Origin: Gekko japonicus
Taxonomy: Eukaryota
NCBI RefSeq assembly: GCF_001447785.1
Contig: NW_015163194.1
Location: 1-64,000 of the forward strand
DNA: 64,000 nt
Direction of reading: 5' to 3'
Positions 2,194-56,351 of the stretch are shown one piece after another. Under the pieces are notes generated by a model. That model did no database searches. It saw only the letters and a program-made list of their open reading frames with translations, and was not told where the DNA came from. The translations under genes and the position numbers were made by a program. Position 1 is the first letter of the stretch. Each line of letters begins with the position of its first letter.

Positions 2194-2386
2194 TCTGAAT
2201 CCAAACATCACGAGACCTTTTCATAATAAACTCTTTCCAGTTCAATGCATAATTTCAAAAACTTCACAGCAGAATGAATAAACTGGGTTCTGCCCGGTTT
2301 ATTCATTCTGCTGTGAAGTTTTTGAAATTATGCATTGAACTGGAAAGAGTTTATTATGAAAAGGTCTCATGATGTTTGGATTCAGA
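2194..2386. repeat. Long near-perfect inverted repeat (arms ~90 bp or more) in a Penelope-like terminus
   Basis: tctgaatccaaacatcacgagacc...gaataaa pairs with tttattc...ggtctcatgatgtttggattcaga; the left arm runs into the N gap. Confidence 0.9.
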
Positions 2387-17000: not shown

Positions 17001-17651
17001 GTCAGGATGATTCATCACCAGACCTTATTTTCTTTCTGAGTGGGTCCCATGGCAGGTAGACAGGTTTTTTTTGGCTTGCCCCTCTGCTGTCATCTCCTTT
17101 TTGGCCCGATACTTTGCAAATGCAGATAACATCTTGGAGAAAAAGTTCCGGGTTCTGGCCCCAGACCTGAACTTAGAGCTGCCAGACTCCCCCCTCCCCA
17201 TTGAGACAGGGGTCCACTGCTGCCATGCCCCACCTTGCCACTGCTAGTCAGCTGGCCAGCAGGAGGGAACTTACCCTAAAAAAGAGGGAGATCCATCTGA
17301 CACGCAGCAACATGTCTATGTCACTGAGGTCCCCTGAGAGTGACGTCATCACATCTGAGTAATTGGGTCGATGCTCTGGTATTGGGGCAAAAACTTTGGT
17401 AGATGCCAACTTAACCATAGATTTTTTTTGTCCAAATACCAGAGCATCATGCCGGCACCCTAGAGACAATGATGTCACTTCCGGTTCACCTGGGCAGTGA
17501 CGCGGAACACCCCCCTCCCCCGTAGAAAACAGAGATATAGTCTGAAGAAATAATGATTTAATAAGATGTCATTGTAAACATAATATATTAATTCTATGTC
17601 CTTGACTCCACAGCTGGGAGTTTAGTTTGTCTAGGATTCCTCCCCCCACTT

Positions 17652-18620
17652 TTATATTGTCATGCTTTTCCCCAGTAAGGACACCTTTCTTCTTCTCAAC
17701 CTGCCCAGAGCTTCCTTCACCTGATCATTCCTCAAGCAATAAATCATGGGGTTCAGAAAGGGTGTAATGGAAGTGTAGAAGAGTGTAACAGCTTTTGTGA
17801 CTTCTGCCTGATTTTCTCCTTCTGGGCAGATGTACATTCCTGCCACGGAGCCATAGAAAAGCGTCACCACGATTAGATGGAAGGATATGGTGGAGAAGGC
17901 CTTCCTACGACTGCCCTCGAAAGAGGGTTTCATGAGGGTGAGAATCACAGTGCCATAGGAGAGCACAACAAACAAGACATTGCTTAAGACAAAAGTGTTG
18001 ACAAACATCTGGCAGACAAGGGGAGTCACTCCTTGGGGTGTGCAGGCCAGGGACAGGATGGTCCCAGCATCACACAAAAAATGGTCAATGACGTTGGGGC
18101 CACAGAAGGACAACCTGGAGATCATAGTCACTGGAATGATGTAGGCCATGAATCCAAGACCCCAACAAGCAATCACCAGAGCAAAGCAGAAATCTGGGGA
18201 CATAATTTGTGAATAGCGCAGTGGGTGGCAGATGGCCAAGTACCGATCCAAGGCCATGGCTGAGAGGAAGAAATTTTCAGTGGCCCCAAAAGAAAATAAA
18301 AGGTAGAACTGGAGGAAACAGTCCCTGAAAGAGATGGTCCCTTGAGGAGATGCCAGATCAAAGATCAACCGAGGCATAGTGGTGCTCACATAACAGATCT
18401 CCAGCCAGGAGAAATTGCTCAGCAGGATGTACATGGAAAGGCGGGCCAAGTGGTTGTCCAGAACCACCAGTACAATGATGGTGAGGTTCTCAGCCAACGT
18501 GACTATGTAGAGAATGGCGAAAAAGATGAGGAGCAGGAACCGTTCCTGTTGGCTGACTCCAAATCCCAGCAAAATGAATTCCGTCACTGTGGTCCCATTG
18601 ACCATTTGGCTCAACTCCAT
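17652..18620 (-). CDS. Olfactory receptor, OR11-like, intact, 322 aa, close paralog of 3012..3980
   Basis: Same motifs, with about 26 aa differences from the 3012..3980 gene. The conserved PMY is changed to SMY. Confidence 0.93.
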   Translation of the reverse strand: MELSQMVNGTTVTEFILLGFGVSQQERFLLLIFFAILYIVTLAENLTIIVLVVLDNHLARLSMYILLSNFSWLEICYVSTTMPRLIFDLASPQGTISFRDCFLQFYLLFSFGATENFFLSAMALDRYLAICHPLRYSQIMSPDFCFALVIACWGLGFMAYIIPVTMISRLSFCGPNVIDHFLCDAGTILSLACTPQGVTPLVCQMFVNTFVLSNVLFVVLSYGTVILTLMKPSFEGSRRKAFSTISFHLIVVTLFYGSVAGMYICPEGENQAEVTKAVTLFYTSITPFLNPMIYCLRNDQVKEALGRLRRRKVSLLGKSMTI

Positions 18621-20546
18621 CTGGAATCAGATGACAGAGTCATCATCACATAGCAGAAGCAGATATTGTCTTNNNNNNNNNNNNNNNNNNNNGGCTTCCG
18701 ATCTGCTTGTCCTAAAATGTTAAAGGGGACCCTTCAGCAGGTCTCCCATCACATTGTGTTTTGACATCCCATGTAGCCCCGCACCTTTTCCTGCCTAAAG
18801 CAAGGATGACTGCAAAATACAAGGGGTAGCAGTATGACAATATCAAAACATGAAAGAAATACTGCAATAGTGCATATAATGAAAAAATGCTGTGATGCGA
18901 TGTCTGATCACTTCATGATGTTTTAATCTTTTCACAAACAGGATGCCAACAGATGGTCAATGAAGGACGAACTTCCCCAGAGCTACCGTTCGTTTCGAAC
19001 TTTCTTTTTCACACAACGGTCTCAGTTCTGAATCCATACATCACGAGACCTTAACAATGAACTCTTTTTCAGTTCAATCAGAATTTCAAGAGCTCTTGGC
19101 AACAAAATAATAATAAGTCTGGTCTTGTTTTTATTCTGTAAACCACTCTAAACACAGATGCTACTAAACCACGAAGTGTAGAACTTAGCTGTGACAAAAG
19201 CACTTTGAATATAGCCAGGATTCTGCCCTCACTTGTTCACTTGTTCACTGTTTCTGTTTTTCTTCCTTGCTGCTAGGTGCCGACATGATGCCAATTTAAA
19301 TAATGCAGAACCAATTCACTGTAAAAGATTTTTTTAAAAAAGATAAAAGTCAAATGCGAGCTATGGAATCTACCTCACCCAAAACCCCATGCATATGCAT
19401 TTTCCATTTTTACCAGAAGAATTTTTTCTCCTTGCTCAGTTTAAGATGGTTTAGGTTGCAATTTCTCTCTTGGCATACTTTATCTGATCTAAATAGACAG
19501 AACAACAGATAAATATTTATTTTACTTACTTAATTTATACCCTGCAACTCTCCCCGATGGGAACCCAGAGTAGCTTACATCATTCTCCTCTCCATTTTTT
19601 CTTCTCAACAATACTGTGAGGTAGGTTAGGCTGAGATTGTCTGTCTCACCCAAGGTTACCTGGCAAGCTTCCACGGAACAGCGGGGATTCAAACCTGGGT
19701 GTCCCAAATCCTCGTACAGTACTGTACGAACTACGCCACAGCAGCCCTCAAATAATGGTATCAATATTTGACTTCTTTACCTCACTCAGAACTTTAGTCC
19801 CTTTGCTTCCAGGGCCACTCCAAACAGGAAGTGTTATCTTAGGAGAGTGACTGCTGGTCCGGTGTGCTTACAGAAGTCATTTTCCCTCAGGAGTTCAGCT
19901 GGTGAGTTTAGACACATGCCCAGCTAGAGGGAGACCCACACCGAAAACTGAGTATTCCTCTCATACGTGGTCTCAAGAACTCACAGCTGCTGCTTTCCCC
20001 CTCAAACACTAACACTTCAGTCTAGTTTTAAGGAAGCATATTTGACAGAAGAAAGCTTGAGGAGTAATTCCTCACTTATGAGAGATGCCAGCCTCCAGGT
20101 GGGGCCTGGGGATCCCCCAGAATTACAGCTCATCTCCAGACTACTGAGATCAGTTCCCCTGGAGAAAATGGATGCTTTGGAGGGTGGACTCTATGGCCTT
20201 GTACCCCACTGAGGTCCCTGTCCTCCCCAGGCTCCATTCCCAAATTTCTGGGAGTTTCCCAACCTGGAGCTGGCAACCCTAGAACCCCACCCACCGGTGG
20301 CTAGGGGAATCTGGCAATCCTACCTATAATTCAGCAGGCACAACAACAAACTTGGAGGGACTGCCAAATAATGCCCTCCGTCATGTGTGCCTGAGTGTGC
20401 ATGGGAAGGGATTCTGGAATGGTTATTAACATTCTCTAATAAATGCAATATTTTGGTCATGTTCATAAGCTCAAGGGCTTGGGCAAAATCCAGTGTTTGA
20501 CGCGTCAGAGTGGAGAAATCTAGCTGATCAAAATCTTTGTTTAATT

Positions 20547-31560: not shown

Positions 31561-32499
31561 AAGCCTCCTCCCACCTCACAGTACTGTTTGTGAGTCTTCA
31601 GGTCAGATGGATGGAATGTTTTAAGTCGTGTCCTTCTAAAGCCAGCAGCCTATGATCTTCAAGTAAAATCCATTCTCTCAACTAAACCAAACTTGGTGCC
31701 CTATAGTAATTTTTACAGTCAGGTACTCCAGATCCAGCATTATCTTTCACATCCTTCAAGGCTTTCAATTTAATTCTTGGCTTTTCCCCTTGCCATATAA
31801 ATAACAGTGCTTCAGAGCAGGGTCCAGCCTCCAAACCAGCCATTTCTTCCTGGGTAATTTAACCATTGTTTCCAGTCTCCAGGTGGGGGCTGGAGACCAC
31901 TCAAAATTACAACTGCTCTCTAGGAGGGAGGGGGAGGAGATGGAAAGCTGAAATCAGAGGGACAGATAAAGGTAGGTTGGTTGTTGGCTGGGAAGGAGAT
32001 AGGGTTGCCACCTCCAGGTTGGGAAATTCCTGGATATTTGAGGGGTGGAGCCTGGAGAGGGTGGGGTTTGATGAGGGGTGAGACCTCAGATAGGTACAAT
32101 GCCATAGTCTCCCCTCTCCAAACCAGCCATTTTCTTCCTGGGGAACCATAGCTGCCAATGTCCAGGTGAGGTAGCAAAGATCAGTTCCTCTGGAGAAAAT
32201 GGTGGAGTCTGTGTCATTATACACTGCTGAGGTTGCCACAGCAAATTGATGCTGAGTGCACCCGCCCACAGCCTCTTTCTAGAGCTCATTGTATTTATTT
32301 TCACAACAGGCCTTATTCCTAGTAGGCTACAATGGAGAATTGATCCAGGACTATCTGGAGCTCTGGGGGTGTGTTTCTTTTGAGGTAGAGGCACCACATT
32401 TGCAGCATTGTTTCCAATTGAGGGAAAATGCATTAATATGATCAGAACATTAAATTCCCTGAGCCGGCAGCTAAATTTTTTTACACCAGCACCCCCTAG

Positions 32500-33065
32500 C
32501 ACAGCTTAGAGGGAATTATGGTACTAACCCAATTCTTTTGACCGGTGGTGGCCAAAGATGTCCAGGACTTCTGTAAGACCTGTGAGGTGGGCCAGTCCCC
32601 TCTCTCCCCCTTTACCCATCATCCACACTTCTTTTGGTCAAGTCACTATGGACTTTGTAGGCCCCCTCCCCTGCACACCTTGGGACTCCCAACGTCTATT
32701 CATGCTGATGGACTATGCCACCCATTACCTTGAGGCCTTTACCCTTTGGAACATGAAAAGTGCAGGGGTGGCTAAGGCCCTAATGCATTTCTCTGCCCAT
32801 GTGAGCTTACTGCAGGACACTCTAATGGATAGAGGGACTTTGTTAAGTTTTACAGATCTGCCAGATCTTCATCACCATACACCATCCTCAAATGGATGGA
32901 CTGGTGGAATGTTTGAACCAAATCATAAAATCAATGCTGAGGAAGTTAGCATGTGAATGGCCAACTGCATGGGACCTTTATATCGACACTTTGATGTTTG
33001 TGATCCGGGAAGCCCCACAGGCCTCCATGGGGTTCGCCTGGTTCAAATCCGTGTATGGGAGAAAG
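32500..33065 (+). mobile_element. Gypsy-type integrase remnant (duplicated at ~38620..39185)
   Basis: Motifs KDVQDFCKTCEV, MDFVGPLP, MDYATHY.EA, HPQMDGLVE.LNQ.IKSML, REAPQASMGF; frameshifted. Confidence 0.8.
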
Positions 33066-33740
33066 CATAGAATTTGGTGCAACAGTGGGACCAGAACTCT
33101 AGAAGCAATCCCACTGTTGCCCCTGAAGCACCAAGAATACAGAGCATCACTGCTCCAGACATAGTGTCCCATCTATTCCTTGTGCCTAAAAGCTACTGAG
33201 GGATCTGTGCTCCATATGTTTATCCAATCCCCTCTTGAAGCTGTCCATGCTTGTAGAAGCCACCACCTCCTGCAGCACTGAATTCCCTGTGTTACTGTCT
33301 ACTCAGACTGGCAGCAGCACTCCAGGGTCTCAGGTAGAGGTCTGTCACATCACCCAGTGCCTGGTCCTTTTAACTGGAGATGCTGGGAACTGAACCTGGG
33401 ACCTTGTGCATGCCAAGCAGATGCTGTACCACTGAGCCACTGCCCCTCTCCACTAACATTTGCCCAGCTACTCAGGAATACACATCTGTATAGGAACACA
33501 TTTCTGCGCATTTGTCCACGATTTAATAGGGATCAAAACAGGAAGAATAACAACAGCAGTATAAAGAATATATAATGTTCAGATCTGAAGTAGTCTTCAT
33601 ACAGAACAGAAACATAAATGAAAAACCAGTCTTTAAGAATGCACTAGTAGAAAGGACCATCACTTGTAGAATGTTTGGTAACTGATTGCCGTAGAATCAT
33701 GTCTTATTTATAGAGTCATGTATTATTTCCTTTGATTTTC

Positions 33741-34703
33741 CTATATGATCCTCTTCTTTTTCAAGAGCCTGGCCATTGCTTCCTTTACCTGATCATTCCT
33801 GAGACAGTAGATCAGGGGGTTAAGCAGAGGGGTAACCGATGAGTAGAAAAGAGTCACCACTTTAGTGACTGTGGCATGACTCTCCCCATCGGGACCGGCA
33901 TACATAGCTGCAACAGAGCCATAGAAAAGGGTCACCACTGCTAGGTGGGAAGAGACTGTGGAGAAGCCCTTGCCGCGGCTACTTGGACTAGAGGCTTTCA
34001 CCAAGGTGACACCTACAAATCCATAGGACACAACAATGAAGAGGAAGGTGGCCAGCAGCACAGAGGAGACAATGACATGGAGAAGGGTGGCAACATACCC
34101 TACAGGAGGGCAAGCCAAGGCTAGGATGGGGCCCGGGTCACAAAGGAAGTGGTCAATAGTGTTGGGACCACAAAAAGACAGCCTGGAGATCAAAACCCCT
34201 GGTACAACATGTGTCAGAATACCAAAGATCCAACAAACAGCCACTAGAACATAGCAAGAATCTTGGGACAGAGCATAGCAAGAATCTTGGGACATAATCT
34301 TGGAGTATTGCAGAGGGCGGCAGATGGCCAAATACCGATCCAAGGCCATGGCTGAGAGGAGCAACAATTCAGTACAGCCGAGTGAGAAGAAGACATAAAA
34401 CTGGATGAAGCAGGCATGGAAGGAGATGACCCCGTGTGTGAAAGGCAGGTCAAAAAGCATTCTCGGCACAGTAGCAGTGACATAACAGATCTCCAGGCAG
34501 GAGAAGTTGCCCAGCAGGATGTACATGGGAAGGCGGGCCAGGTGAGAGTCTTGAATGACCGTCATGATGATAATGAAGTTTTCAGCCAATGTGAGGGCAT
34601 AGATAGCTGTGAACAAGGCAAAAAGCAGCATTCGCCCCTGTTGTCCCACGCTGAAGCCTAGCAGAATGAACTCCTGAACCGTGGTTCCATTTACTAGCTC
34701 CAT
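33741..34703 (-). CDS. Olfactory receptor, OR11-like, 320 aa, with in-frame 8-aa duplication in intracellular loop 2
   Basis: Full set of OR motifs. SQDSCYAL-SQDSCYVL results from a 24-bp tandem repeat at 34246..34293. Confidence 0.92.
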   Translation of the reverse strand: MELVNGTTVQEFILLGFSVGQQGRMLLFALFTAIYALTLAENFIIIMTVIQDSHLARLPMYILLGNFSCLEICYVTATVPRMLFDLPFTHGVISFHACFIQFYVFFSLGCTELLLLSAMALDRYLAICRPLQYSKIMSQDSCYALSQDSCYVLVAVCWIFGILTHVVPGVLISRLSFCGPNTIDHFLCDPGPILALACPPVGYVATLLHVIVSSVLLATFLFIVVSYGFVGVTLVKASSPSSRGKGFSTVSSHLAVVTLFYGSVAAMYAGPDGESHATVTKVVTLFYSSVTPLLNPLIYCLRNDQVKEAMARLLKKKRII

Positions 34704-37803: not shown

Positions 37804-40288
37804 AAACCAAACTTGGTGCCCTATAGTAATTTTTACAGTCAGGTACTCCAGATCCAGCATTATCTTTCACATCCTTCAAGGCTTTCAATTTAATTCTTGG
37901 CTTTTCCCCTTGCCATATAAATAACAGTGCTTCAGAGCAGGGTCCAGCCTCCAAACCAGCCATTTCTTCCTGGGTAATTTAACCATTGTTTCCAATCTCC
38001 AGGTGGGGGCTGGAGACCACTCAAAATTACAACTGCTCTCTAGGAGGGAGGGGGAGGAGATGGAAAGCTGAAATCAGAGGGACAGATAAAGGTAGGTTGG
38101 TTGTTGGCTGGGAAGGAGATAGGGTTGCCACCTCCAGGTTGGGAAATTCCTGGATATTTGAGGGGTGGAGCCTGGAGAGGGTGGGGTTTGATGAGGGGTG
38201 AGACCTCAGATAGGTACAATGCCATAGTCTCCCCTCTCCAAACCAGCCATTTTCTTCCTGGGGAACCATAGCTGCCAATGTCCAGGTGAGGTAGCAAAGA
38301 TCAGTTCCTCTGGAGAAAATGGTGGAGTCTGTGTCATTATACACTGCTGAGGTTGCCACAGCAAATTGATGCTGAGTGCACCCGCCCACAGCCTCTTTCT
38401 AGAGCTCATTGTATTTATTTTCACAACAGGCCTTATTCCTAGTAGGCTACAATGGAGAATTGATCCAGGACTATCTGGAGCTCTGGGGGTGTGTTTCTTT
38501 TGAGGTAGAGGCACCACATTTGCAGCATTGTTTTCAATTGAGGGAAAATGCATTAATATGATCAGAACATTAAATTCCCTGAGCCGGCAGCTAAATTTTT
38601 TTACACCAGCACCCCCTAGCACAGCTTAGAGGGAATTATGGTACTAACCCAATTCTTTTGACCGGTGGTGGCCAAAGATGTCCAGGACTTCTGTAAGACC
38701 TGTGAGGTGGGCCAGTCCCCTCTCTCCCCCTTTACCCATCATCCACACTTCTTTTGGTCAAGTCACTATGGACTTTGTAGGCCCCCTCCCCTGCACACCT
38801 TGGGACTCCCAACGTCTATTCATGCTGATGGACTATGCCACCCATTACCTTGAGGCCTTTACTCTTTGGAACATGAAAAGTGCAGGGGTGGCTAAGGCCC
38901 TAATGCATTTCTCTGCCCATGTGAGCTTACTGCAGGACACTCTAATGGATAGAGGGACTTTGTTAAGTTTTACAGATCTGCCAGATCTTCATCACCATAC
39001 ACCATCCTCAAATGGATGGACTGGTGGAATGTTTGAACCAAATCATAAAATCAATGCTGAGGAAGTTAGCATGTGAATGGCCAACTGCATGGGACCTTTA
39101 TATCGACACTTTGATGTTTGTGATCCGGGAAGCCCCACAGGCCTCCATGGGGTTCGCCTGGTTCAAATCCGTGTATGGGAGAAAGCATAGAATTTGGTGC
39201 AACAGTGGGACCAGAACTCTAGAAGCAATCCCACTGTTGCCCCTGAAGCACCAAGAATACAGAGCATCACTGCTCCAGACATAGTGTCCCATCTATTCCT
39301 TGTGCCTAAAAGCTACTGAGGGATCTGTGCTCCATATGTTTATCCAATCCCCTCTTGAAGCTGTCCATGCTTGTAGAAGCCACCACCTCCTGCAGCACTG
39401 AATTCCCTGTGTTACTGTCTACTTGGACTGGCAGCATCACCGAATGCCTGGTCCTTTTAACTGGAGATGCTGGGAACTGAACCTGGGACCTTGTGCATGC
39501 CAAGCAGATGCTGTACCACTGAGCCACTGCCTCTCTCCACTAACATTTGCCCAGCTACTCACTTACAAAAACAAACGAAGGAGGGGAACCAGCGTACATA
39601 AATAGGTACAAAGTAAAAAAAAAATGCTGGCTGAATTCACAGAGGTGATCACAATATTAAAAAAAATTAAAATTTAATGCCGAGTTCAATAACGCAATAA
39701 CAATATAACAAAATAAAGCCAAGTTGTTCTTGCAAGAAACTACAGTAGTGCAGAAAAATAATGTCCCCAAAATTTCAATGTGTCTTACTCCTGTTGCATT
39801 ATAATTCTATAGTCCAACTTGACATCCATTCATCATAGAGTGGACTCATATAGTTCCTGAAAAATCCTTATAATCTTGAAATCCATAAACCATAGAAGAT
39901 GCATAGTCTGGATGCAAGCTGCCGCATTTTGAATAATACTTTTTCAAAACCAATAGGCTACAGTGGGACCCAATCTCAGTAGTAGCACATACAGAAGCCA
40001 GTTTATTCAATCACAAAGGTTAAACACATTTCTATAGGATCACGTTTCTGTGCATTTGCCCACCATGTAATTGGAATCAGAACAGTAACGATAACAACAG
40101 CAGTCGAAAGAATATCTTAATAACGTTGAGATCTGAAGTAGTCTTCATACAGATGAGGAAACAAATATGAAAAACCAGTCTTTAAGAATGCATCATTAGA
40201 AAGGACCATCTCTCACACAACCTTTGGTAACTGAGTGCCCTAAAACAACAAAAATATAGAGAGTCATGTATTATTCCCTTTGATTTTC

Positions 40289-41227
40289 CTATATGATCCT
40301 CTTCTCTTTCAAGAGCCTGGCCATTGCTTCCTTTACCTGATCATTCCTGAGACAGTAGATAAGAGGATTAAGCAGAGGGGTAACCGATGAGTAGAAAAGA
40401 GTCACCACTTTAGTGACCGTGGCATGGCTCTTCCCATTGGGTATGGCATACATAGCTGCAACAGAGCCAAAGAAAAGGGTCACCACTGCTAGGTGTGAAG
40501 AGACCGTGGAGAAGCCCTTGCCACGGCTACTGTGGCTAGAGGCTTTCACCAAGGTGACACCTACAAATCCATAGGACACAACAATGAAGAGGAAGGTGGC
40601 CAGCAGCCCAAAGGAGACAATGACATGGAAAAGGGGGCCAGCATACCCTACAGGAGGGCAAGCCAAGGCTAGGATGGGGCCAGGGTCACAAAGGAAGTGG
40701 TCAATAATGTTGAGACCACAAAAAGACAGCCTAGAGATCAAAACCACTGGTACAACATACAACAGAATACCAAAGATCCAACAAACAGCCACTAGAGCAT
40801 AGCAAGAGTCTTGGGACATTATCTTGGGGTATTGCAGAGGGTGGCAGATGGCCAAATACCGATCCAAGGCCATGGCTGAGAGGAGGAAACATTCAGTACA
40901 GCCGAGTGAGAAGAAGACATAAAACTGGATGAAGCAGGCATGGAAGGAGATGACCCCGCATGTGAAAGGCAGGTCAAAAAGCATTCTCGGCACAGTGGCA
41001 GTGACATAACAGATCTCCAAGAAGGAGAAGTTCCCCAGCAGGATATACATGGGAAGGCGAGCCAGGTGAGAGTCTTGAATTACTGTCATGATGATAATGA
41101 AGTTCTCAGCCAAAGTGAGGGTGTAGATAGCTGTGAACAAGGCAAAAAGCAGCATTCGTCCGTGTTGTCCCATGCTGAAGCCCAGCAGAATGAATTCCTG
41201 GACCATAGTCCTGTTGACTAGCTCCAT
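40289..41227 (-). CDS. Olfactory receptor, OR11-like, intact, 312 aa (start at MELVNRT)
   Basis: Full set of OR motifs. The ORF-track start at 41305 is probably intronic or UTR, because paralogs start at MEL and a candidate acceptor (cctcctcgcAG) lies just upstream of that ATG. Confidence 0.93.
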   Translation of the reverse strand: MELVNRTMVQEFILLGFSMGQHGRMLLFALFTAIYTLTLAENFIIIMTVIQDSHLARLPMYILLGNFSFLEICYVTATVPRMLFDLPFTCGVISFHACFIQFYVFFSLGCTECFLLSAMALDRYLAICHPLQYPKIMSQDSCYALVAVCWIFGILLYVVPVVLISRLSFCGLNIIDHFLCDPGPILALACPPVGYAGPLFHVIVSFGLLATFLFIVVSYGFVGVTLVKASSHSSRGKGFSTVSSHLAVVTLFFGSVAAMYAIPNGKSHATVTKVVTLFYSSVTPLLNPLIYCLRNDQVKEAMARLLKEKRII

Positions 41228-42770
41228 GTGAAACGCACCATCAGTCTGCGAGGAGGCTAATCCCCCACTGTCCATTGCTAAGGTGCTCCTTCTGACGTTT
41301 GGCATAGATGAAGCACCTGCTGGGAATAGTATAGTTTAGACTTAGCATATGGCATGCAGTGACTGCTGTTAAGAGAACCATTAACAGGCAAAGACCAAGG
41401 ACTAATCTGTATAACAGGGAAGCCAAAACTTCCGTTGTTTCCCCCACTGAACATAAGATCCTCAGAAAAGTCCTGCTGGATCAGACCAGTGGTCCATCTA
41501 GCCCAGCATCGTGCCTCACACAGTTGACAACCAGTTCCTCTGGAGGGCCAACAACAGGGCATAGAGGCTGAGGCCTTCCCCTAATGTTGCCTCCCTGCTC
41601 TAGGATTCAGAGGTTTAGTGCCTCTGAACATAGAGGCTCCCCTCAGTCACCATGGCAAGTAGCCACTGATATACTAATCTTCCATGAATCGATATTATTT
41701 TCTTTGAAGCTATTTATTCCTGTTGCCATCACTACATCTTCTGGCATTGCATTTTTTCATTAAATGATGTGAATTAGACTGGTTATGGGGATTTCAGTTT
41801 TGCAGTTATGCTATTCTTTCCAGTAAAACCTTTCCATTCCAACATGTTTCTAGTTCACGATACAAGAATACCTACTCAGGACCTGGGGACACTTCTGGCA
41901 GAACCAAACTATGCTACGTGATCCTTACTATGGCCCCAGTCACCCAGGCCAGATACGGGGGGGGGGGGGGGAAGGTGTGGCTAATTGCCCCGGCACAGTT
42001 TGATGCGCGATTACGCGATCAGATGCACCGGCGGCACACCACGGGTCCTTCCCTCGGCGCTGGCGGGTAAACGAGGGACTGGAGGGGAATGCTGCGCGCT
42101 GGGAGGTACTAGTTTTTTAAGGCACATTGTTGGCGGTAAGCCACGGGTGCACTCCACTTCCCAGATGTTGGGGTGTGATTGCACCCGGATAATCCGCCCA
42201 CCTTCCGTGCCTCTCCCGTGGCAACTTTGCCTGTGACCGGAGCCCAAGTTCTCTTTCTTAAGAACATAGTTGGCTGGACCAGCACAAATCCCATCTAGTC
42301 CACAGTAGTTTTCAGAAATCACAGCAATTGGTGGATCACAGGAAACTGTTCACTGGTTCCCCAGTGGACCATCAAATGCCTTCTATGGTCTTTTAGACTG
42401 CAAGTTTGGTAATGAAAAGCCGGCAGTATTTTCTCATCTCCGGAAGCAGAGATTAAAAGCTTTCAGACCTTTCTTGCATACTGACCAATGAGCAACCATC
42501 CCCATCTCAGATCTCTTCTGCCACCCCCTTCTGCTTTGGTAATAATCTATGTCCTGTACCTCAGTAATGCACAGACTGCTACCCCCACAGTCAAGGGCAT
42601 GAGGATGTCACGGTACCAGCATATGAAGGGCCATGTGTTATCCCTTGGCTCAAACCCCAGGCTCCAATGTCCTTTGTGCAGAGGAGAGACAAGTGACTGC
42701 ACTGCTGGATGTGTGTGAAGATTTCTTATGAGTTCCCACATGAAGGCTGAACCCTGTTTTCAAAGCCCTC

Positions 42771-47449: not shown

Positions 47450-48260
47450 CCATTCGTCAGAATAATACATATTTGTTCAATACAAACAGATTAGCTTTCA
47501 GTCCAAAAGTATATATTTAGAGATATAACCTTAAAACCATTAAAATGTAAAAAAATAAAAAGTTTAACTGTCCATTATATCAGAATAACTATGAAAATGT
47601 CTAAAACTAAACTAATTATAAATCATACAAAAGGTGATTGAGGGTATTTATTGTGGAATTTTGCCAGCTGGAAGCAGGATTTAGCTATTTGTCTGGAGTT
47701 TTGCTGATCTTCCTCTGTCAGAAGTCTCTCTAGAACAGCACTATCTGCATCAGGTGCTGGCCTATCTCAGAGGGGAGAGATAAGCTTATCCCTGTAAACT
47801 TGATGAAAGGGGCAGCGGAAGAACATATGGGGCACCGATTCCACTTCTCCCAAGGAACATGGGCAGCACCTGTCTTCATATGGTATCTTTCTATATTTTC
47901 CCTCTAGAACAGTGGTTCTCAACCTTCCTAATGCCGCGACCCTTTAATACAGTTCCTCATGTTGTGGTGACCCCCAACCATAAAATTATTTTTGTTGCTA
48001 CTTCATAACTGTAATTTTGCTACTGTTATGAATCGTAATGTAAATATCTGATATGCAGGATGTATTTTCATTGTTACAAATTGAACATAATTAAAGCATA
48101 GTGATTAATCACAAAATCAATATGTAATTATATATTGTGAAATATTTATTTCTAATTACAGGCGACCCCTTAGACGACCCCTGTGAAAGGGTCGTTCGAC
48201 CCCCAAAGGGGCCGTGACCCACAGGTTGAGAACCGCTGCTCTAGAACCTTAGAGGGAATA
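47450..48260 (-). mobile_element. Old LINE 3' fragment (RTE-X-like) interrupted by the SPIN MITE; relatives at ~36990-37345 and 43540-43980 (+)
   Basis: VLEGKYRKIPYEDRCCPCSLGEVESVPHMFFRCP zinc-knuckle motif. Confidence 0.55.
47910..48238. mobile_element. SPIN (URR1-like) non-autonomous hAT transposon
   Basis: TIRs CAGTGGTTCTCAACCT / AGGTTGAGAACCGCTG, perfect 8-bp TSD ctctagaa, body matches the recalled SPIN/URR1 consensus. Confidence 0.9.
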
Positions 48261-49377
48261 GGAGGCAGCAGTGGGATCCCCAGGAAGGAAGCAAGGAAGG
48301 AAAAGAAAGGTACCAGGAGAGTCAGAAAATAAGTTTAGGCTAGCCCCTTCCCACTGACTCGGGTTAAGCTGGTCTTTATGGGTATTGCTTAACGACATTC
48401 CTACCATTAGAAGCTATTCCATTAACCTCGATTGTAACATGACATTGATTGATATTGTCCTACTAGCAGGCCTGTAGCCATGGGGGCATTTGGGGGCATT
48501 GCCCCCTACCGATGAATGCTGCCCCTCAGACAAAAGAAATAGATTTAAAAAATGTTTTTTATTGCAAGTACCAGGAGAGTCAGAAAATAAGTTTAGACTA
48601 GCCCCTTCCCACTGACTCGGGTTAAGCTGGTCTTAATGGGCATTGCTTAAAGACATTACTACCATTAGAAGCTAAGGGGGTGTGGCATATGCTAATGAGT
48701 TATGCTAATGAGTTCCCCTAGCTCTTTTTCTACAAAACGACCCCTGGTAGCAGGCCTGTAGCCATGGGGGCATTTGGGGGCATTGCCCCCTACCGATGAA
48801 TGCTGCCCCTCAGACAAAAGAAATAGATTTAAAAAATGTTTTTTATTGCAAGTTGCACGTGGGTGTTCCGAAATGACCCCAGGCACAGTCAAAGAAACTT
48901 CAGTCACATTTTTTTTCTTTTTTTCCAGGCCAAAAATTAAACGGGTTTTTAAAAATGCAATGAAATAAAATAGCCGAAAATAGAATAAAATTGCGAAATG
49001 AAAAATAGAGTTGGAGATTCCCCCCCCCGGCTTATGCAGAAAAGGAGTCCAGAATCGAGTCTCTACAATGGAGGGGACTAGAGGACCAGAGGAGGACTAG
49101 AGGTCGCAGTGGAGCCGGAGCTGCCGCTTCTGCCGTTGCAAGAGGAGCAGCAGGTGTGCCCAGGGTGCCCCCCTCGGTTTCTCCATGCCCCGCCAACCGA
49201 AATTTTCTGGCTGTGCCCCTGCCTACTAGAGATCATAAAATACAAAGAGGCAATCCAAGTTTACAAAATGCACCAGGGGACCTAACCCCCACTAGCTATG
49301 GCAGCGATTGTTCCCAAATAGCAAGCAGATCGGCATGTGCATTTGAGTTAATGGCTGTCCTGCTTCTCCCCATGACC

Positions 49378-50343
49378 CTACTTCATCCTCTTCCTTTGCA
49401 AGCGTCTGGATACTGCCTCCTTCACCTGGTCGTTCCGAAGGCAGTAGATCAGCGGGTTAAGCAGAGGGGTGACGGCAGAGTAGAAGAGAGTCACGACCTT
49501 CGTTGTCTCTGCGCGATCTTCCCCGTTCGGCTCTACGTACATTGCGACCACAGAGCCATAGAAAAGGGTCACCACGGCCAGGTGGGAAGAGACTGTGGAG
49601 AAGCCCTTCATACGGTTGCTCCGGCTTGATTTTTTGACCAGGGTGAGAGTTACAAATGCGTACGAGACTGCAATGAACAGAAAGGTGGCCAGAACAACAG
49701 AGGAGACAAAGATGTTGAAGAGGCGGGGTACATACCCCAGCGGGGGGCAAGCCAAAGCAAAGAGGGGACCCGGATCACACACAAAGTGGTCAATAGTGTT
49801 GGGGCCGCAGAAGGATAGCCTGGAGATCAGGAACACTGGTGCTGCGTACCACAAGAAACCAAGGATCCAGCAAGCAGCCACCAATTTGTAGCAGGCCTCT
49901 TGAGACATCATTTTCGGGTACTGCAGTGGGCGACAGATGGCCAAATAGCGATCCAAGGCCATGGCCGAGAGGAAGAAGCATTCGGTATTGCCGAGGGAGA
50001 AGAAGTTGTAGAATTGGAGGAAGCAGGCATGGAAGGAGATGACCCCATATGGGAAGGACAGGTCAAAGAGCATCCTTGGCACTGTGGCACTCACATAACA
50101 CATCTCTAGCCAGGAGAAGTGGCTGAGCAAGATGTACATGGGAAGGCGGGCCAGGTGAGAGTCTTGAACGACTATCGTGATGATGATGATGTTCTCAGCC
50201 AAAGTGAGGGCATAGACAGCCATGAAGAAGATGAGAAGGAGCAGGCGTCCCTGTTGTCCAACCCTGAAGCCCAGCAGGATGAACTCCTGTACTGTGGTCC
50301 CATTGCCCACCTTCGTCTCATGCACAGGACCACTCTGCATCAT
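49378..50343 (-). CDS. Olfactory receptor, OR11-like, intact, 321 aa (downstream copy of a 1261-bp tandem duplication)
   Basis: Full set of OR motifs; 5 aa differences from 50639..51604. Confidence 0.9.
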   Translation of the reverse strand: MMQSGPVHETKVGNGTTVQEFILLGFRVGQQGRLLLLIFFMAVYALTLAENIIIITIVVQDSHLARLPMYILLSHFSWLEMCYVSATVPRMLFDLSFPYGVISFHACFLQFYNFFSLGNTECFFLSAMALDRYLAICRPLQYPKMMSQEACYKLVAACWILGFLWYAAPVFLISRLSFCGPNTIDHFVCDPGPLFALACPPLGYVPRLFNIFVSSVVLATFLFIAVSYAFVTLTLVKKSSRSNRMKGFSTVSSHLAVVTLFYGSVVAMYVEPNGEDRAETTKVVTLFYSAVTPLLNPLIYCLRNDQVKEAVSRRLQRKRMK

Positions 50344-50638
50344 CGTTCAATAGAAAACAAAGCTCTTCCATCCAAAGCTTGGAGCAGATTCTGCCGTTGC
50401 AAGAGGAGCAGCAGGTGTGCCCAGGGTGACCCACTCAGTTTCTCCATGCCCCACCAACCAAAATTTTCTGGCTGTGCCCCTGCCTACTAGAGATCATAAA
50501 ATACAAAGAAGCAATCCAAATTTACAAAATGCACCAGGGGACCTAGCCCCCTCTAGCTATGGCAGCGATTGTCCCCAAATAGCAAGCAGATCAGCATGTG
50601 CATTTGAGTTAATGGCTGTCCTGCTTCCCCCCATGACC

Positions 50639-51604
50639 CTACTTCATCCTCTTCCTTTGCAAGCGTTTGGATACTGCCTCCGTCACCTGGTCGTTCCGAA
50701 GGCAGTAGATCAGCGGGTTAAGCAGAGGGGTGACGGCAGAGTAGAAGAGAGTCACGACCTTCGTTGTCTCTGCGCGATCTTCCCCGTTCGGCTCTACGTA
50801 CATTGCGACCACAGAGCCATAGAAAAGGGTCACCACGGCCAGGTGGGAAGAGACTGTGGAGAAGCCCTTCATACGGTTGCTCCGGCTTGATCTTTTTACC
50901 AGGGTGAGAGTTACAAATGCGTACGAGACTGCAATGAACAGAAAGGTGGCCAGAACAACAGAGGAGACAAAGATGTTGAAGAGGCGGGGTACATACCCCA
51001 GCGGGGGGCAAGCCAAAGCAAAGAGGGGACCCGGATCACACACAAAGTGGTCAATAGTGTTGGGGCCGCAGAAGGATAGCCTGGAGATCAGGAACACTGG
51101 TGCTGCGTACCACAAGAAACCAAGGATCCAGCAAGCAGCCACCAATTTGTAGCAGGCCTCTTGAGACATCATTTTCGGGTACTGCAGTGGGTGACAGATG
51201 GCCAAATAGCGATCCAAGGCCATGGCCGAGAGGAAGAAGCATTCGGTATTGCCGAGGGAGAAGAAGTTGTAGAATTGGAGGAAGCAGGCATGGAAGGAGA
51301 TGACCCCATATGGGAAGGACAGGTCAAAGAGCATCCTTGGCACTGTGGCGCTCACATAACATATCTCTAGCCAGGAGAAGTGGCTGAGCAAGATGTACAT
51401 GGGAAGGCGGGCCAGGTGAGAGTCTTGAACGACTATCGTGATGATGATGATGTTCTCAGCCAAAGTGAGGGCATAGACAGCCATGAAGAAGATGAGAAGG
51501 AGCAGGCGTCCCTGTTGTCCAACCCTGAAGCCCAGCAGGATGAACTCCTGTACTGTGGTCCCATTGCCCACCTTCGTCTCATGCACAGGACCACTCTGCA
51601 TCAT
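50639..51604 (-). CDS. Olfactory receptor, OR11-like, intact, 321 aa (upstream copy)
   Basis: Full set of OR motifs: PMYILLSHFS, MALDRYLAICHPLQY, KGFSTVSSHL, PLLNPLIYCLRN. Confidence 0.93.
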   Translation of the reverse strand: MMQSGPVHETKVGNGTTVQEFILLGFRVGQQGRLLLLIFFMAVYALTLAENIIIITIVVQDSHLARLPMYILLSHFSWLEICYVSATVPRMLFDLSFPYGVISFHACFLQFYNFFSLGNTECFFLSAMALDRYLAICHPLQYPKMMSQEACYKLVAACWILGFLWYAAPVFLISRLSFCGPNTIDHFVCDPGPLFALACPPLGYVPRLFNIFVSSVVLATFLFIAVSYAFVTLTLVKRSSRSNRMKGFSTVSSHLAVVTLFYGSVVAMYVEPNGEDRAETTKVVTLFYSAVTPLLNPLIYCLRNDQVTEAVSKRLQRKRMK

Positions 51605-52507
51605 CGTTCAATAGAAAACAAAGCTCTTCCATCCAAAGCTTGGAGCAGATAAAGCAAATAATGCTGGGCAATCAGTCGTCCTACAGCTCAGAGCAGGCTG
51701 GTGTTCCTGAGGCAAGGATTCCTGTTTGTAGAGATAGCCACTGGTGTGTCCAAGTTATGCTGAAGAAGAAGAATCCAATTTCTGAATATGGTTACATTTT
51801 TTTAAAAAAATCAAATATCGTTACCAAGAAGAAGGTTTAGATCAGAAGTGGTCTGGCTTCAGTCTTGTGTGACCTTGTCTGTGTGGGGGGTTTTTTGCTA
51901 GAACCCTGGTGATCTGCTCAGACCTTTTTAAATTTATAAAGCAATCTGGCACATTCATTGTCTCAGGACAGTTACAGAGCAACTATGTCGAGTCCTCTAG
52001 AGTGTACAGTTGTGCTGGAAAGAATAGCCCTTACTAGACCAACCCAAAGCTCCGTTTATCCAGAATTCAATGCAAAAACCACAGTCCACCTGAAATTAGC
52101 CAGTGGTCCTCCAACGGACCTTGATTTTCCTTCTACACATATCAGCTTAAGTGGCAACCAACCATTCGGTCCTTCTCTTTAAGAAAGGTGGAATGAAGCG
52201 CAAGCCTTTCCACCTCTACCCACTATTTCCCATCTTTATTGCTGTACCTTAGTCATTCTCAGAAAGCTGCTCCAACTAACCAGGGACTTGATGTAGACAC
52301 ATTGCTGGCTTTGGGGGGTGGGGCCTTAGGTACTACTCCTTTTATCAAAATCTGGGTTGAAATGCCATCTTCTTTGTGGTGAAAACAGACAAGATTTTAT
52401 CATGTGGGTGGACTTTAGGCAGGTTGGCCTTACAAAGGATGGATTAGGTCTGTATAGAGGATGGATCATGTTTTTAAAGGATTGCTATGAAGACTGCATC
52501 TAAAAAA

Positions 52508-52607
52508 AAATGGCCCTTGGGAAGTTGTCTACAGAGAGTAATTCTGTTTTCCAGAAACTAAATTTTCCTTAGAGATCAATTGCCTACTGGAGATTTAGTA
52601 ATTTACA
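52508..52607 (-). promoter_or_regulatory. Putative OR promoter module for the 50639/49378 pair
   Basis: AAATGGCCCTTGGGA followed by TCCTTAGAGATCAATTGCCTACTGGAGATTTAGTAATTTACA; candidate donor AG|GTACAG at 52246-52247. Confidence 0.55.
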
Positions 52608-53267
52608 AGATCTTCTTATCTTTCTGGGTACCAAATCCCCTGCACGGAATAGATGGAGCTATGGAGGTGGGGCTCACACTGGGATTACTTTGGCTATGCG
52701 GGGCTTTCTTCCACATGTCCAGTGAACCTGCTGCTTGGTCAGTTATGACTAGGGCTATGTGCTTGGATACATTCAGTCCAAAGATATACCTGGAGAAGTT
52801 GGCTTGGCGTGGATTCTCTGGTTTGACATTGGTTGTATTGGGCTTGCCACATTGGCCTGCGATTTTGCTGGGTTCTCTGGTTTGATGTTTGTTCTGTTTG
52901 TATTGGGAGGCTTTTGGTCAGTGGCTGCATGCATTTGGGTGTCTGGCTATTCTTTGCCCTGGAGAAAGCTCCTTTAAAGGGAAACCATGGAGGATGGCTG
53001 GGGATCAAATTGGTTCAGTTTCCATGAAACATGTAGAAACTTTAGGGGACAGGTAGCACTAACCCTGCTGCGATTTTAGTGCCATCTTCTCAAAAAACAG
53101 CCACTTCAACTTTTCAGAAATATTCCCCATAGGGAATAATGGACCCAAATAGTTTTGGAATCCCAAAACATCCCAAATCTGGATATCAAATTGGTATTTG
53201 GGACTGGAATAACTCAGAATACTGATAATTATGCCCTCCCCAATATCTGGATCTAAAGACCAAACAA

Positions 53268-53444
53268 CATTTTGTAAACAGCCTTGATGCCCCCTGGATC
53301 TCTCTCCACCAAGTTGCCACTGATGTCATAACTAGGGATGTTCACCTAAAAGGGGGGGGGCTTTTAGGTGAACATCCCTAGTTAAGACATCAGTAGCAAC
53401 TTGGTGGGGAGAGGTCCAAAGGCATCAAGGCTGCTTACAAAATG
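53268..53444. repeat. Inverted repeat, ~85-bp arms, G-run loop
   Basis: cattttgtaaacagcc...ttcacctaaaag pairs with cttttaggtgaa...ggctgcttacaaaatg, with about 7 mismatches. Confidence 0.9.
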
Positions 53445-54159
53445 TGTTTTGGATTCCTTTGTGTCCATGCTGCACATTTTGGAGGCTTCTGTTTATTCTG
53501 TTGGCTGTTGATTTAATGACCAGCAAATGATATGAGACCTGGAAGGTTTCTTCTGCATATTTGATTCAGAAAAGTCCTGTTCTCATTTGTCTTGTAGTCC
53601 AACCCTGGGGGGAAGGGGCATGTCTAACCTACTTTTGATTTATTGACATTCGCCACAGAAATCTCATGCTCAGAGTTCTGAGTCTAGGACCCAGGTTAAA
53701 ACATGAAATGGCTGAGTGATTAAGAGAGTTTGGTGAAGCAAGCTATGATGCAGCAGCAGCAGCAGCAGCAGAACTGGAAGCAGGAGATGGCCAGTTCTAC
53801 TACGGGCCTGATGGAAGCCCTCCGGGGGCCTGATCTGGCCCCCGGGCCGCATGTATGACACCCCTGGGTGGTTTTAATGCTGATGTTTGCAATTGTGTTA
53901 TACGTGTCAGATTGTAATGGTCTTTGGCCACAGGCAATAAACTTTATTGTATCATAACTAAACAAAGAGCTTCTTGTATGATCACAAGCAAATCACTTTC
54001 CCATGGATCGTTGATGGTGTCAATATTGCAGATATTAGTCTTCTGCTAAGACTTCTGTGCTTATACAGAAAGATTAGAGATGGAAGGTAATAATTAATTA
54101 AATAACAATTTAAACAGTAACTTGATCATTATTATTTTAATAACAACAGCAAAAAGAAC

Positions 54160-54430
54160 AACTACCATTGTGCCAGTTGTCATGGAAGCCCTTGGGCCAG
54201 TGCCTAGAAGCCTCAAGAAACACCTGGACCTTCTGAACATTCTGAACAATAATACCATTCTGAACAAATAATACCAGCTAAGCTCCAAAAGGCAGTGTTG
54301 CTTGGAACGGCAAGAATCCTGCAAAGATACATATGCAGTTCCCAAGAACCTGGCTAGATCTTGAATTGCAGAACACCATCTGTCAGTCAAACATATGACT
54401 GTGACAACTGATGATGGTGATGATAATAAA
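54160..54430 (+). mobile_element. R4/Dong-type non-LTR retrotransposon 3' fragment
   Basis: IVPVVMEALGPVPRSLKKHL..LQKAVLLGTARILQRY (restriction-like endonuclease C-terminus), flanked by TAA-rich sequence. Confidence 0.65.
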
Positions 54431-55020: not shown

Positions 55021-56265
55021 TCAGTTTTGTTCGCTCTTCACACAAGAATGAGAGAAAATGCACTTGTTCCTCAACCGCCCCATAGCCTCCTTCATTTCAT
55101 GATTCCTTAGTGTATATATGATAGGATTGAGGGCGGGCGTGACCACTGTGTAGAATATGGAAGCCATCTTGTCCACCCTGGAGCTGGAGAATGGTATGAG
55201 ATACACAAAGAGGCAGGGTACAAAAATCAGGCTGACCACCATCAAGTGTGAGCCGCAGGTGGACAGGGCCTTCCCTCCCCTTTCCTTGAAATGGCCCTTA
55301 AGAGTTGCTATGATGACGCCATAGGAGACAAGCAAGATGAGGAAGGAGACCAGGGAGAGGAGGCCACTGTTGGCCACCATGAGGAGCTCTGTGACATAGG
55401 CATTGGCACAAGCGAGCCTGACCAGCTGTGGGACGTCACAGTAGAAACTGTCCAGCTCATTTGGGCCACAAAATGGAAGCCGGAGGATCAGAACCAGTTG
55501 GGTTGCAGAATGGATGAAGCCTCCGACCCAGCACGAAACAAGTAGCCTGACGCAGCGTGGCCGGTTCATGGCGACCCTGTAAGTCAGTGGTAAGCCATGA
55601 GTGTGAGAAGCAGCATCTCTGAACCACCCAAAAAGTGGAGGAAGAAGAACTGGGCCATGCAGCCCCCAAATGAAACGGTCCTGCCACAGGTCACGAGGCC
55701 GGCCATCTTCTTCGGGGTGCGCGAACAAGACATCACAGTAGAAACTGTCCAGCTCATTTGGCCCACAAAATGGAAGCCGTAGGATCAGAACCAGTTGGGT
55801 TGCAGAGTGGATGAAGCCTCCAACCCAGCACGAAACAAGTAGCCTGACGCAGCGTGGCCGGTTCATGGTGACCCTGTAAGTCAGTGGTTGGCAGATGGCC
55901 ACGTAGCGATCATAAGCCATGAGCGTGAGGAGCAGCATCTCTGAACCGCCAAAAAAGTGGAGGAAGAAGAACTGGGCCATGCAGCCCCCAAATGAAATGG
56001 TCCTGCCACAAGTCACCAGGACGGCCATCATCTTCGGGGTAGCCACACACCCCAAGGCAGCATCGATGATGGACAAACTGGCCAGGAAAAAGTACATGGG
56101 GGACTGATGGAGGCGGGGCTCTGTGGTCACAGTTACCACAATGAGAAGGTTGCCAGACATAATGGTAGTATAGCAGACCAACATTGGGACGAAGAGAAGG
56201 AGTCGGATGGAATGGGAGCAGGAGATACCCAGGAAGATGAACTCAGTTACAGTGGAGCCATTCAT
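55021..56265 (-). CDS. OR4-like olfactory receptor with a 99-aa internal insertion (414 aa); chimeric gene or pseudogene
   Basis: OR4-type motifs: SPMYFFLASLS, GGSEMLLLTLMAYDRYVAIC, GGFIHS, LPFCGPNELDSFYCDVPQL, ANSGLLSL, KALSTCGSHL, NPIIYTLRN. Start at MNGST (56265). Segment 55729..56040 is repeated at 55432..55718. Confidence 0.8.
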   Translation of the reverse strand: MNGSTVTEFIFLGISCSHSIRLLLFVPMLVCYTTIMSGNLLIVVTVTTEPRLHQSPMYFFLASLSIIDAALGCVATPKMMAVLVTCGRTISFGGCMAQFFFLHFFGGSEMLLLTLMAYDRYVAICQPLTYRVTMNRPRCVRLLVSCWVGGFIHSATQLVLILRLPFCGPNELDSFYCDVLFAHPEEDGRPRDLWQDRFIWGLHGPVLLPPLFGWFRDAASHTHGLPLTYRVAMNRPRCVRLLVSCWVGGFIHSATQLVLILRLPFCGPNELDSFYCDVPQLVRLACANAYVTELLMVANSGLLSLVSFLILLVSYGVIIATLKGHFKERGGKALSTCGSHLMVVSLIFVPCLFVYLIPFSSSRVDKMASIFYTVVTPALNPIIYTLRNHEMKEAMGRLRNKCIFSHSCVKSEQN

Positions 56266-56279
56266 GGAGAGGACATAAC

Positions 56280-56301
56280 CTGGGGAAGAGAAGATGGTTA
56301 G
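56280..56301 (-). promoter_or_regulatory. 3' splice acceptor of the OR4-like coding exon
   Basis: Minus strand reads CTAAC (branch point) catcttctcttcccc AG|gttatgtcctctccATG, a canonical acceptor 14 nt before the ATG. Confidence 0.8.
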
Positions 56302-56351
56302 AGGACTGTGGTGTTCTGACCAGCCCTTCATGTGCAACACAGCAGCCATAA

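What the first reader, a model, noticed from the sequence alone, without database searches (positions are those of the whole stretch)
49128..51649. Two intact olfactory receptors 295 bp apart sharing one promoter: candidate dicistronic or alternatively spliced OR pair
Seen: the 1261-bp duplication copied the CDS, 250 bp of 3' flank and only 45 bp of upstream sequence. The downstream gene (49378..50343) therefore has no copy of the promoter module or first exon, which lie at ~52246-52607. The spacer 50344..50638 has no AATAAA or ATTAAA on the minus strand; the first one I found is at ~48842, beyond both CDSs. Candidate acceptors precede the second ATG (ctcctcttgcaacggcAG and atctgctccaAG). Both ORFs are intact. 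Established: vertebrate ORs are normally kilobases apart with their own promoters and follow one neuron-one receptor. Inference: one promoter choice could give a dicistronic mRNA, or two receptors by alternative 3' exon use.
Basis: partly seen in the sequence, partly recalled or inferred. Interest (0 to 1): 0.8.

Follow-up and report, generated by a model that had tools for sequence, protein, structure and literature searches.

The report
Back-to-back gecko smell-receptor gene copies
In this draft gecko genome one smell-receptor gene is written twice, head to tail and 295 bases apart, but two other sequenced animals carry it once and no RNA shows either copy in use, so "two receptors run from one switch" remains an untested idea.

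Summary
The sequence observation holds. A 1,261-bp unit (49128-50388 and 50389-51649, genes on the minus strand) is repeated head to tail with 19 substitutions and no indels. Each copy carries an intact 321-aa OR11G2-like olfactory receptor ORF. The 295-nt spacer has no poly(A) hexamer. A promoter/first-exon module conserved in three paralogs lies only upstream of the upper copy.

The duplication is not corroborated outside this assembly. In two deeply sequenced animals (X1, X2) the locus sits at single-copy depth, and one contig leaves the window exactly at the junction. A thin third DNA sample also favours one copy. One RNA run of unknown tissue has no reads on the receptor sequence.

The 19 differences behave like old allelic variants, not like divergence after a duplication. 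Reads from the assembled animal were not available, so the junction itself could not be tested.

My estimate:
- About 0.5: a real but young or rare tandem duplication, with the lower copy a promoter-less passenger in the upper copy's 3' UTR.
- About 0.4: a false duplication in a short-read draft.

Shared OR 5' exons (mouse, human) and read-through OR arrays (insects) are already known. Interest is low to moderate. The scan has noted this stretch only as this same finding, not on other DNA.

The parts
50389..51649 (-). Upper copy (U) of the 1,261-bp unit: 250 nt of 3' flank, the CDS and 45 nt of 5' flank
   Evidence: Offset-1261 identity and BLAST at 98.5% over 1,262 nt
49128..50388 (-). Lower copy (D) of the unit
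   Evidence: It carries 18 of the 19 states that differ from other animals' sequence
50639..51604 (-). U coding sequence, 321 aa, OR11G2-like class II olfactory receptor
   Evidence: Pfam 7tm_4 E=6e-38. Best named relatives are gecko 'olfactory receptor 11G2-like', 83-88% identical
49378..50343 (-). D coding sequence, 321 aa, differing from U at 5 residues (I81M, H138R, R238K, T308K, K313R)
50344..50638 (-). Spacer of 295 nt: the 3' flank of U joined to the 45-nt 5' flank of D. It has no poly(A) hexamer and no O/E-like site
50388..50390 (.). Duplication junction, with one shared base (50389) and no N
   Evidence: Contig X1 record 1 matches 50389-50468 perfectly and leaves the window at 50389
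52247..52530 (-). Upstream module conserved in three paralogs: O/E-like site (52513-52522), a putative non-coding first exon, and a donor AG|GT at 52248|52247. Present only upstream of U
   Evidence: Alignment A1 and motif scan. No RNA support
51639..51665 (-). Candidate acceptors of U: the paralog-conserved AG (51665-51664, outside the duplicated part) and AAG (G at 51639, pyrimidine fraction 0.75)
50378..50391 (-). Candidate acceptors of D: CAG formed by the U 3' flank (G at 50391, pyrimidine fraction 0.70) and the copied AAG (G at 50378, 0.50)
48842..48847 (-). First AATAAA downstream of both coding sequences; likely the shared poly(A) signal
50437..50573 (.). Moderately repeated element inside the 3' flank of the unit (its twin is at 49176-49312). 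Ten of the twelve flank differences fall in or beside it
   Evidence: Contig depth about 5,760 against about 80 in neighbouring bins in X1 and X2; positions of the differences

Best explanation
The assembly holds a head-to-tail duplication of the single coding exon of an OR11G2-like class II olfactory receptor. My best reading is that it is a genuine but young or rare structural variant of the sequenced animal. It would have been made by a non-homologous tandem duplication with one base of microhomology. That event copied the CDS, part of the 3' UTR and 45 nt upstream, but not the promoter/first-exon module or the poly(A) signal. If so, transcripts starting upstream of U run through the spacer and through D to the AATAAA at 48847. 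D then lies inside the 3' UTR of U's mRNA and is not translated, except in any minor mRNA form that splices exon 1 to the AG at 50391 or 50378. The 19 differences are probably allelic variants of a locally very polymorphic locus, which a short-read assembler distributed over the two copies, rather than divergence since the duplication. Shown: the repeat, both ORFs, the missing signals, the conserved upstream module, and single copy in other animals. Inferred: that the junction exists in an animal, the route of transcription, and non-translation of D.
For: The repeat and its anatomy are. The join is seamless, with 1-nt microhomology and no N. The two SNP-dense 3' blocks give unique anchors 1,261 nt apart. 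Identical stretches of 294, 287 and 209 nt lie between them. A k=29 de Bruijn assembler with local gap filling (methods of the Gekko japonicus draft) can rebuild such a structure only if reads support the junction, because it has no route to write shared k-mers twice in one contig. All 5 amino-acid differences sit at positions that vary among orthologs or are conservative. OR 3' UTRs of 1.2-1.8 kb, and OR remnants embedded in them, are ordinary in mouse and human (PMC7055050). Honeybee tandem OR duplicates that lost the terminator between them are transcribed by read-through from one promoter (PMC12001030).
Against: X1 and X2 (about 80x) carry the CDS at 79-87x, the same as the single-copy flank (75-94x), and X1 record 1 leaves the window at 50389. 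The thin raw-read sample X11 gave about 2 reads on the unit, against about 4 expected for one copy and about 9 for two. U and D differ by 1.5%, about as much as either differs from X1/X2 (about 2-3%). U is identical to X1/X2 over the roughly 300 nt of 50389-50711 that two zero-difference contigs cover, where D has 14 differences across 50389-50761. D keeps the conserved K308 while U and X2 have T. That is the pattern of two old alleles. Gaps lie inside neighbouring OR genes, so this cluster is poorly assembled. No RNA evidence exists.
Confidence: 0.5

Rival explanations
1. False (heterotype) duplication. The animal has one copy with two divergent alleles, and scaffolding plus gap filling of a short-read draft wrote both alleles in tandem. 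There is then no biology to explain.
For: Single copy in X1 and X2, and probably in X11. U-D differences match the local allelic diversity, cluster in one block (14 in 373 nt against 5 in 888 nt, Fisher p=8e-5), and include an ancestral state in D. One X11 read mixes window-type and X-type variants within about 60 nt, which suggests one gene pool with very high local diversity. False duplications are among the commonest assembly errors and rise with heterozygosity (PMC8081667). The likely source assembly is SOAPdenovo k=29 + SSPACE + local gap filling. First readers flagged several other tandem exon duplications of about 0.85-1.5 kb in this genome, including a frame-shifting one in DKC1 (unchecked).
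Against: There is no N at the join. A de Bruijn assembler cannot place identical stretches of 200-290 nt twice in a contig without a read-supported loop edge, so an unsupported butt joint made at the gap-filling stage is needed. The classical artefact leaves a gap between the copies (PMC8081667). I did not verify that the window comes from that assembly.
Confidence: 0.4
2. The duplication is real and one promoter choice yields two receptor proteins in one neuron, either from a dicistronic mRNA or by alternative use of the two coding exons.
For: No promoter module and no poly(A) hexamer lie between the copies. Acceptor-like AGs precede the D ATG. Both ORFs are intact. Mouse and human each have 7 OR loci that share 5' UTR exons with a neighbour (PMC7055050).
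Against: This reading needs the duplication to be real, as discussed above. There is no RNA on the locus. The paralog-conserved acceptor is not in the copied 45 nt. Translation of a second long ORF is not expected in vertebrate mRNAs (established knowledge). In ants only the first gene of a read-through OR array is translated (cited in PMC12001030). The two proteins differ at 5 mild positions, so even co-expression would hardly change what a neuron detects.
Confidence: 0.08
3. An old tandem duplication whose coding parts are kept alike by gene conversion while the 3' flanks diverged.
For: The CDS is 0.7% diverged against 4.8% in the 250-nt 3' flank.
Against: An old duplication should be present in X1 and X2, which are single-copy. 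The U flank is identical to theirs, so nearly all the change lies on D alone: 18 states against 1. Most flank differences lie in a repeated element.
Confidence: 0.03

Closest known systems
Mouse and human OR loci that share 5' UTR exons with a neighbour, and OR remnants embedded in the 3' UTR of another OR (Barnes et al. 2020, PMC7055050)
   Same: Two OR coding regions on one strand would be served by one upstream non-coding exon/promoter, or the downstream one would lie inside the upstream gene's long 3' UTR.
   Different: Those cases are backed by RNA splice junctions, and the embedded ones are mostly pseudogene remnants. Here both ORFs are intact, they lie 295 nt apart and are 98.5% alike, and no RNA is available.
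Read-through (polycistronic) transcription of tandem OR duplicates in honeybees and ants (PMC12001030; review PMC8481607)
   Same: A duplication that drops the terminator and the downstream promoter leaves a short spacer, and the upstream promoter transcribes both genes.
   Different: Insect ORs are an unrelated protein family with a different system of receptor choice. This has been shown there by RT-PCR and ATAC-seq; nothing has been shown here.
Copy-number variants and young tandem duplicates in vertebrate OR clusters
   Same: OR clusters grow by local duplication. This window itself holds pairs at 92% (2868-4027 and 17510-18667) and paralogs at 76-77%.
   Different: The usual units are several kb and include the promoter; genes here lie 6-15 kb apart. 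This unit is 1.26 kb and lacks a promoter.
False heterotype duplications in draft assemblies (Rhie et al. 2021, PMC8081667)
   Same: Two near-identical copies side by side, with differences at the level of allelic variation, in a polymorphic and repeat-rich region; absent from other individuals.
   Different: There is no gap between the copies, and read depth in the assembled animal could not be checked.

Membership tests
Vertebrate class II olfactory receptors (Pfam 7tm_4), OR11G2-like group | Match to the olfactory-receptor 7TM profile above the curated cut-off | tested here: met
   PF13853 at 133.9 and 131.6 bits against a cut-off of 27
Vertebrate class II olfactory receptors (Pfam 7tm_4), OR11G2-like group | Single uninterrupted coding exon of about 310-320 codons carrying the conserved OR motifs (LPMY, MALDRY, KGFST.SSH, NPLIY) | tested here: met
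   Two 321-codon ORFs. The motifs fall in invariant columns of the alignment with 8 squamate orthologs and 2 in-window paralogs
Vertebrate class II olfactory receptors (Pfam 7tm_4), OR11G2-like group | Closest named relatives belong to the group | tested here: met
   Gecko and lizard 'olfactory receptor 11G2-like' proteins at 76-88% identity
Vertebrate class II olfactory receptors (Pfam 7tm_4), OR11G2-like group | Expression in olfactory sensory neurons | tested here: inconclusive
   One RNA run of unknown tissue gave no reads on the locus
OR loci sharing a promoter/5' exon or read-through transcript | RNA splice junction or continuous RNA joining the upstream gene's exon or transcript to the downstream CDS | tested here: inconclusive
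   RNA run X10 had zero depth from 50574 to 53587 and no joints on the locus. The tissue is unknown and only about 3% of the run was read
OR loci sharing a promoter/5' exon or read-through transcript | No promoter and no terminator between the two coding regions | tested here: met
   No poly(A) hexamer and no copy of the paralog-conserved upstream module or O/E-like site in the spacer. This rests on motifs only
Genuine tandem duplication (structural variant) | Junction present in reads of an animal | not testable with these tools
Genuine tandem duplication (structural variant) | Present in other individuals or relatives | tested here: not met
   X1 and X2 are single-copy by depth, and a contig leaves at 50389. 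X11 favours one copy
False heterotype duplication | Differences between copies behave as allelic variants | tested here: met
   Pairwise differences are U-D 19, U-X about 26 and D-X about 43 per 1.26 kb. They show block structure, and D carries an ancestral state
False heterotype duplication | Each copy at half depth in the assembled animal, with a gap or unsupported join between the copies | not testable with these tools
   The animal's own reads were not available. No N lies at the join

The most novel reading that the evidence does not exclude
The duplication is real, and the promoter-less lower copy is translated from an mRNA that splices the upper gene's first exon to a chance acceptor created at the junction. 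One promoter choice would then put two slightly different receptors into one reptile olfactory neuron. That would be a natural vertebrate counterpart of insect single-promoter OR arrays, and a snapshot of how a new OR gene starts out before it gains its own promoter.
Probability: 0.08. Interest if true: 0.65.

Novelty: new member of a known kind. Interest (0 to 1): 0.25.

Why it matters
If the duplication is real, this would be a very early stage in the birth of an olfactory receptor gene: an intact copy with no promoter and no terminator of its own. It would allow a direct test of whether vertebrate receptor choice is made per promoter or per coding sequence. If it is an artefact, it shows how draft assemblies inflate OR gene counts. 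The gecko genome paper reports a threefold OR expansion from such a draft (PMC4673495). Either way, the case can be settled with one PCR or a look at existing long-read data.

Tried and rejected
I chose that stretch to avoid an internal long repeat. As a result the 40 unmatched letters of X1 record 1 could not be compared with 49088-49127.
- No offered run is the assembled animal; the best share of words was 0.34.
- I considered that U starts exactly 40 nt before the first U/D difference, as a k=41 bubble arm would. I dropped this because the Gekko japonicus draft used k=29.
- I considered that the D flank differences were borrowed from other copies of the repeated element. This cannot explain the CDS differences, where D keeps the ortholog-conserved K308.
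- Rfam gave nothing on 48000-53000.
- A search for earlier read-based checks of tandem duplications in this genome found none.
- I made no spliced exon-1 + CDS model and searched none; the exons were examined separately by reference.
- No N run was filled.
- The identification of the genome as Gekko japonicus rests on an earlier scan note plus gecko best hits. I did not verify it.
Full report
**Observation**

A 1,261-bp unit is repeated head to tail. The lower copy (D) is 49128-50388 and the upper copy (U) is 50389-51649; "upper" means upstream in the genes' minus-strand sense. The copies differ by 19 substitutions and no indels:
- 12 in the 250-nt 3' flank,
- 7 in the 966-nt CDS,
- none in the 45 nt upstream of the ATG.

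Of the 7 CDS differences, 5 change the amino acid (I81M, H138R, R238K, T308K, K313R) and 2 are silent.

Both ORFs are intact at 321 aa and match Pfam 7tm_4 far above its cut-off. Their best named relatives are 'olfactory receptor 11G2-like' proteins of geckos, at 83-88% identity. The OR motifs fall in invariant alignment columns, and the gecko-type MMQ start is shared with other geckos.

The join shares one base (50389) and has no N. The window is an OR cluster whose other genes lie 6-15 kb apart. The nearest paralogs are 76-77% identical, so this pair is an outlier.

- *Poly(A) signals.* None of 12 poly(A) hexamer variants occurs on the minus strand in the spacer or in the D CDS. The first AATAAA is at 48847.
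- *Upstream module.* An O/E-like site (52513-52522) recurs upstream of two paralogous genes. An alignment of the three upstream regions shows a conserved module of about 270 nt that ends in a shared AG|GTAC donor at 52248|52247. This supports a promoter and non-coding first exon for U. The spacer holds nothing similar.
- *Acceptors.* The acceptor conserved in the paralogs maps to 51665-51664, which is 15 nt outside the duplicated 45 nt. D would therefore have to use either a CAG formed by the U 3' flank (G at 50391, pyrimidine fraction 0.70) or the copied AAG (G at 50378).

**Is the duplication real?**

No offered run comes from the assembled animal; the best share of words was 0.34. I laid four runs on 50300-54400.

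*X1 and X2.* These are Logan contigs at about 80x from two samples of one study. They differ from the window by about 2-3%.
- They carry the CDS on one contig each, at depth 79.2 and 86.7. Their single-copy flank contigs are at 75-94.
- X1 record 1 matches 50389-50468 without a difference and then leaves the window exactly at the junction. Its 40 unmatched letters were not shown.
- Both animals therefore have one copy.

*X11.* This is raw DNA at about 0.7x. It gave about 2 reads on the unit, where about 4 are expected for one copy and about 9 for two (P of 2 or fewer: 0.19 against 0.008).

*X10.* This RNA run, of unknown tissue, gave no reads on the CDS, the unique part of the spacer or the upstream module. 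Its only reads fell on repeated elements.

**What the 19 differences look like**

At the sites where the contigs of X1 and X2 can be read, they carry the U state at all but one of the 19 positions. Two sites (50593, 50628) fall under X1's two unlisted differences, and X2 is U-type there.
- Two zero-difference contigs (X1 record 1, 50389-50468, and X2 record 9, 50492-50711) show U identical to X1/X2 across about 300 nt of 50389-50711.
- Elsewhere U differs from them by about 2.6% (Poisson P about 2e-4).
- D has 14 of its differences in the matching 373 nt and 5 in the other 888 nt (Fisher p=8e-5).
- D keeps the ortholog-conserved K308, while U and X2 have T.
- One X11 read mixes window-type and X-type variants within about 60 nt. 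This suggests one gene pool with very high local diversity.

U and D therefore look like two old alleles, not like copies that diverged after a duplication.

Ten of the 12 flank differences lie in or beside a moderately repeated element at 50437-50573, where contig depth is about 5,760 against about 80 nearby.

**Weighing the two readings**

An earlier scan note names this genome as the Japanese gecko draft. That fits the gecko best hits, the 148-kb scaffold and the N runs. I did not verify it. That draft was built with SOAPdenovo at k=29, SSPACE and local gap filling.

*For an artefact:*
- The locus is a single copy in other animals.
- The differences between copies look allelic.
- Gaps sit inside neighbouring OR genes.
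- False duplications are well known to rise with heterozygosity (PMC8081667).
- First readers noted other tandem exon duplications of about 0.85-1.5 kb in this genome, still unchecked.

*For a real variant:*
- The join is seamless.
- A de Bruijn assembler cannot write identical stretches of 209-294 nt twice without a read-supported loop edge.
- A real duplication with two SNP-dense anchor blocks would be rebuilt exactly as seen.

One scenario fits all the observations. The animal is heterozygous for a young duplication, and the assembler assigned the other allele's variants to one of the copies.

I put about 0.5 on a real variant and about 0.4 on an artefact. I cannot decide between them without reads of the assembled animal.

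**Mechanism if real**

U would be transcribed from the conserved module. With no terminator in the spacer, the transcript would continue through D to the signal at 48847. That gives a 3' UTR of about 1.8 kb, which is within the mouse and human OR range (PMC7055050).

D would be an untranslated passenger, as in ant and honeybee read-through OR arrays (PMC12001030; PMC8481607). Translation of D would need alternative splicing onto chance acceptors. All of these steps are inferred.

**Comparison and novelty**

Shared OR 5' exons and ORs embedded in 3' UTRs are documented in mouse and human. Single-promoter OR arrays are documented in insects. Young tandem OR duplicates and false duplications are both ordinary. 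At best this is a new member of a known kind, and at worst it is not a real feature.

I built no joined exon model and searched none. No N was filled.

Noticed in passing
window 31684-33320 and 37804-39440: A 1.6-kb block is present twice at 99.6% identity, 6.1 kb apart. Each copy lies downstream of one of two OR paralogs (33741-34703 and 40289-41305), which did not match each other in a search requiring at least 90% identity. The block contains a decayed integrase-like ORF (32558-32956). It could be a young retroelement piece, a gene conversion or another assembly duplication.
   Followed up: partly
window 48310-48853: Just downstream of D lie two adjacent units of about 260-285 nt. One block is 100% identical over 106 nt, one is 95% identical over 107 nt, and the middle does not align. 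Each unit carries an AATAAA on the minus strand (48563, 48847). Part of the second middle recurs at 15158 and 24700.
   Followed up: partly
window 53588-53866: A very high-copy repeat: contig depth above 600,000 in X1 and X2, and about 230x per strand in the thin DNA run. It is also abundant in the RNA run, with sharp read boundaries at 53626 and 53866. It is probably a young SINE-like element.
   Followed up: no
window 55432-56040 (inside ORF 55021-56349): An internal tandem repeat of about 300 nt at 87% identity lies inside a 442-aa OR-like ORF. Another first-reader note flagged this feature (s1-821612).
   Followed up: no
window 2194-2386: A 193-nt stretch that is its own reverse complement at 95%, directly after the N run 1738-2193.
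   Followed up: no
window 50300-53360 against runs X1 and X2: Animals carrying one shared species label, which appears to be the window's own species, differ from the window by 2-3.7% across this OR locus. Next to that is a 320-nt block with no difference. Local diversity is unusually high, or the sampled populations are deeply split.
   Followed up: partly
window 2868-4027 and 17510-18667: Two OR genes (3012-3980 and 17652-18620) with their flanks are 92% identical, 14.6 kb apart. This is an ordinary, promoter-including OR duplication, useful for comparison.
   Followed up: no
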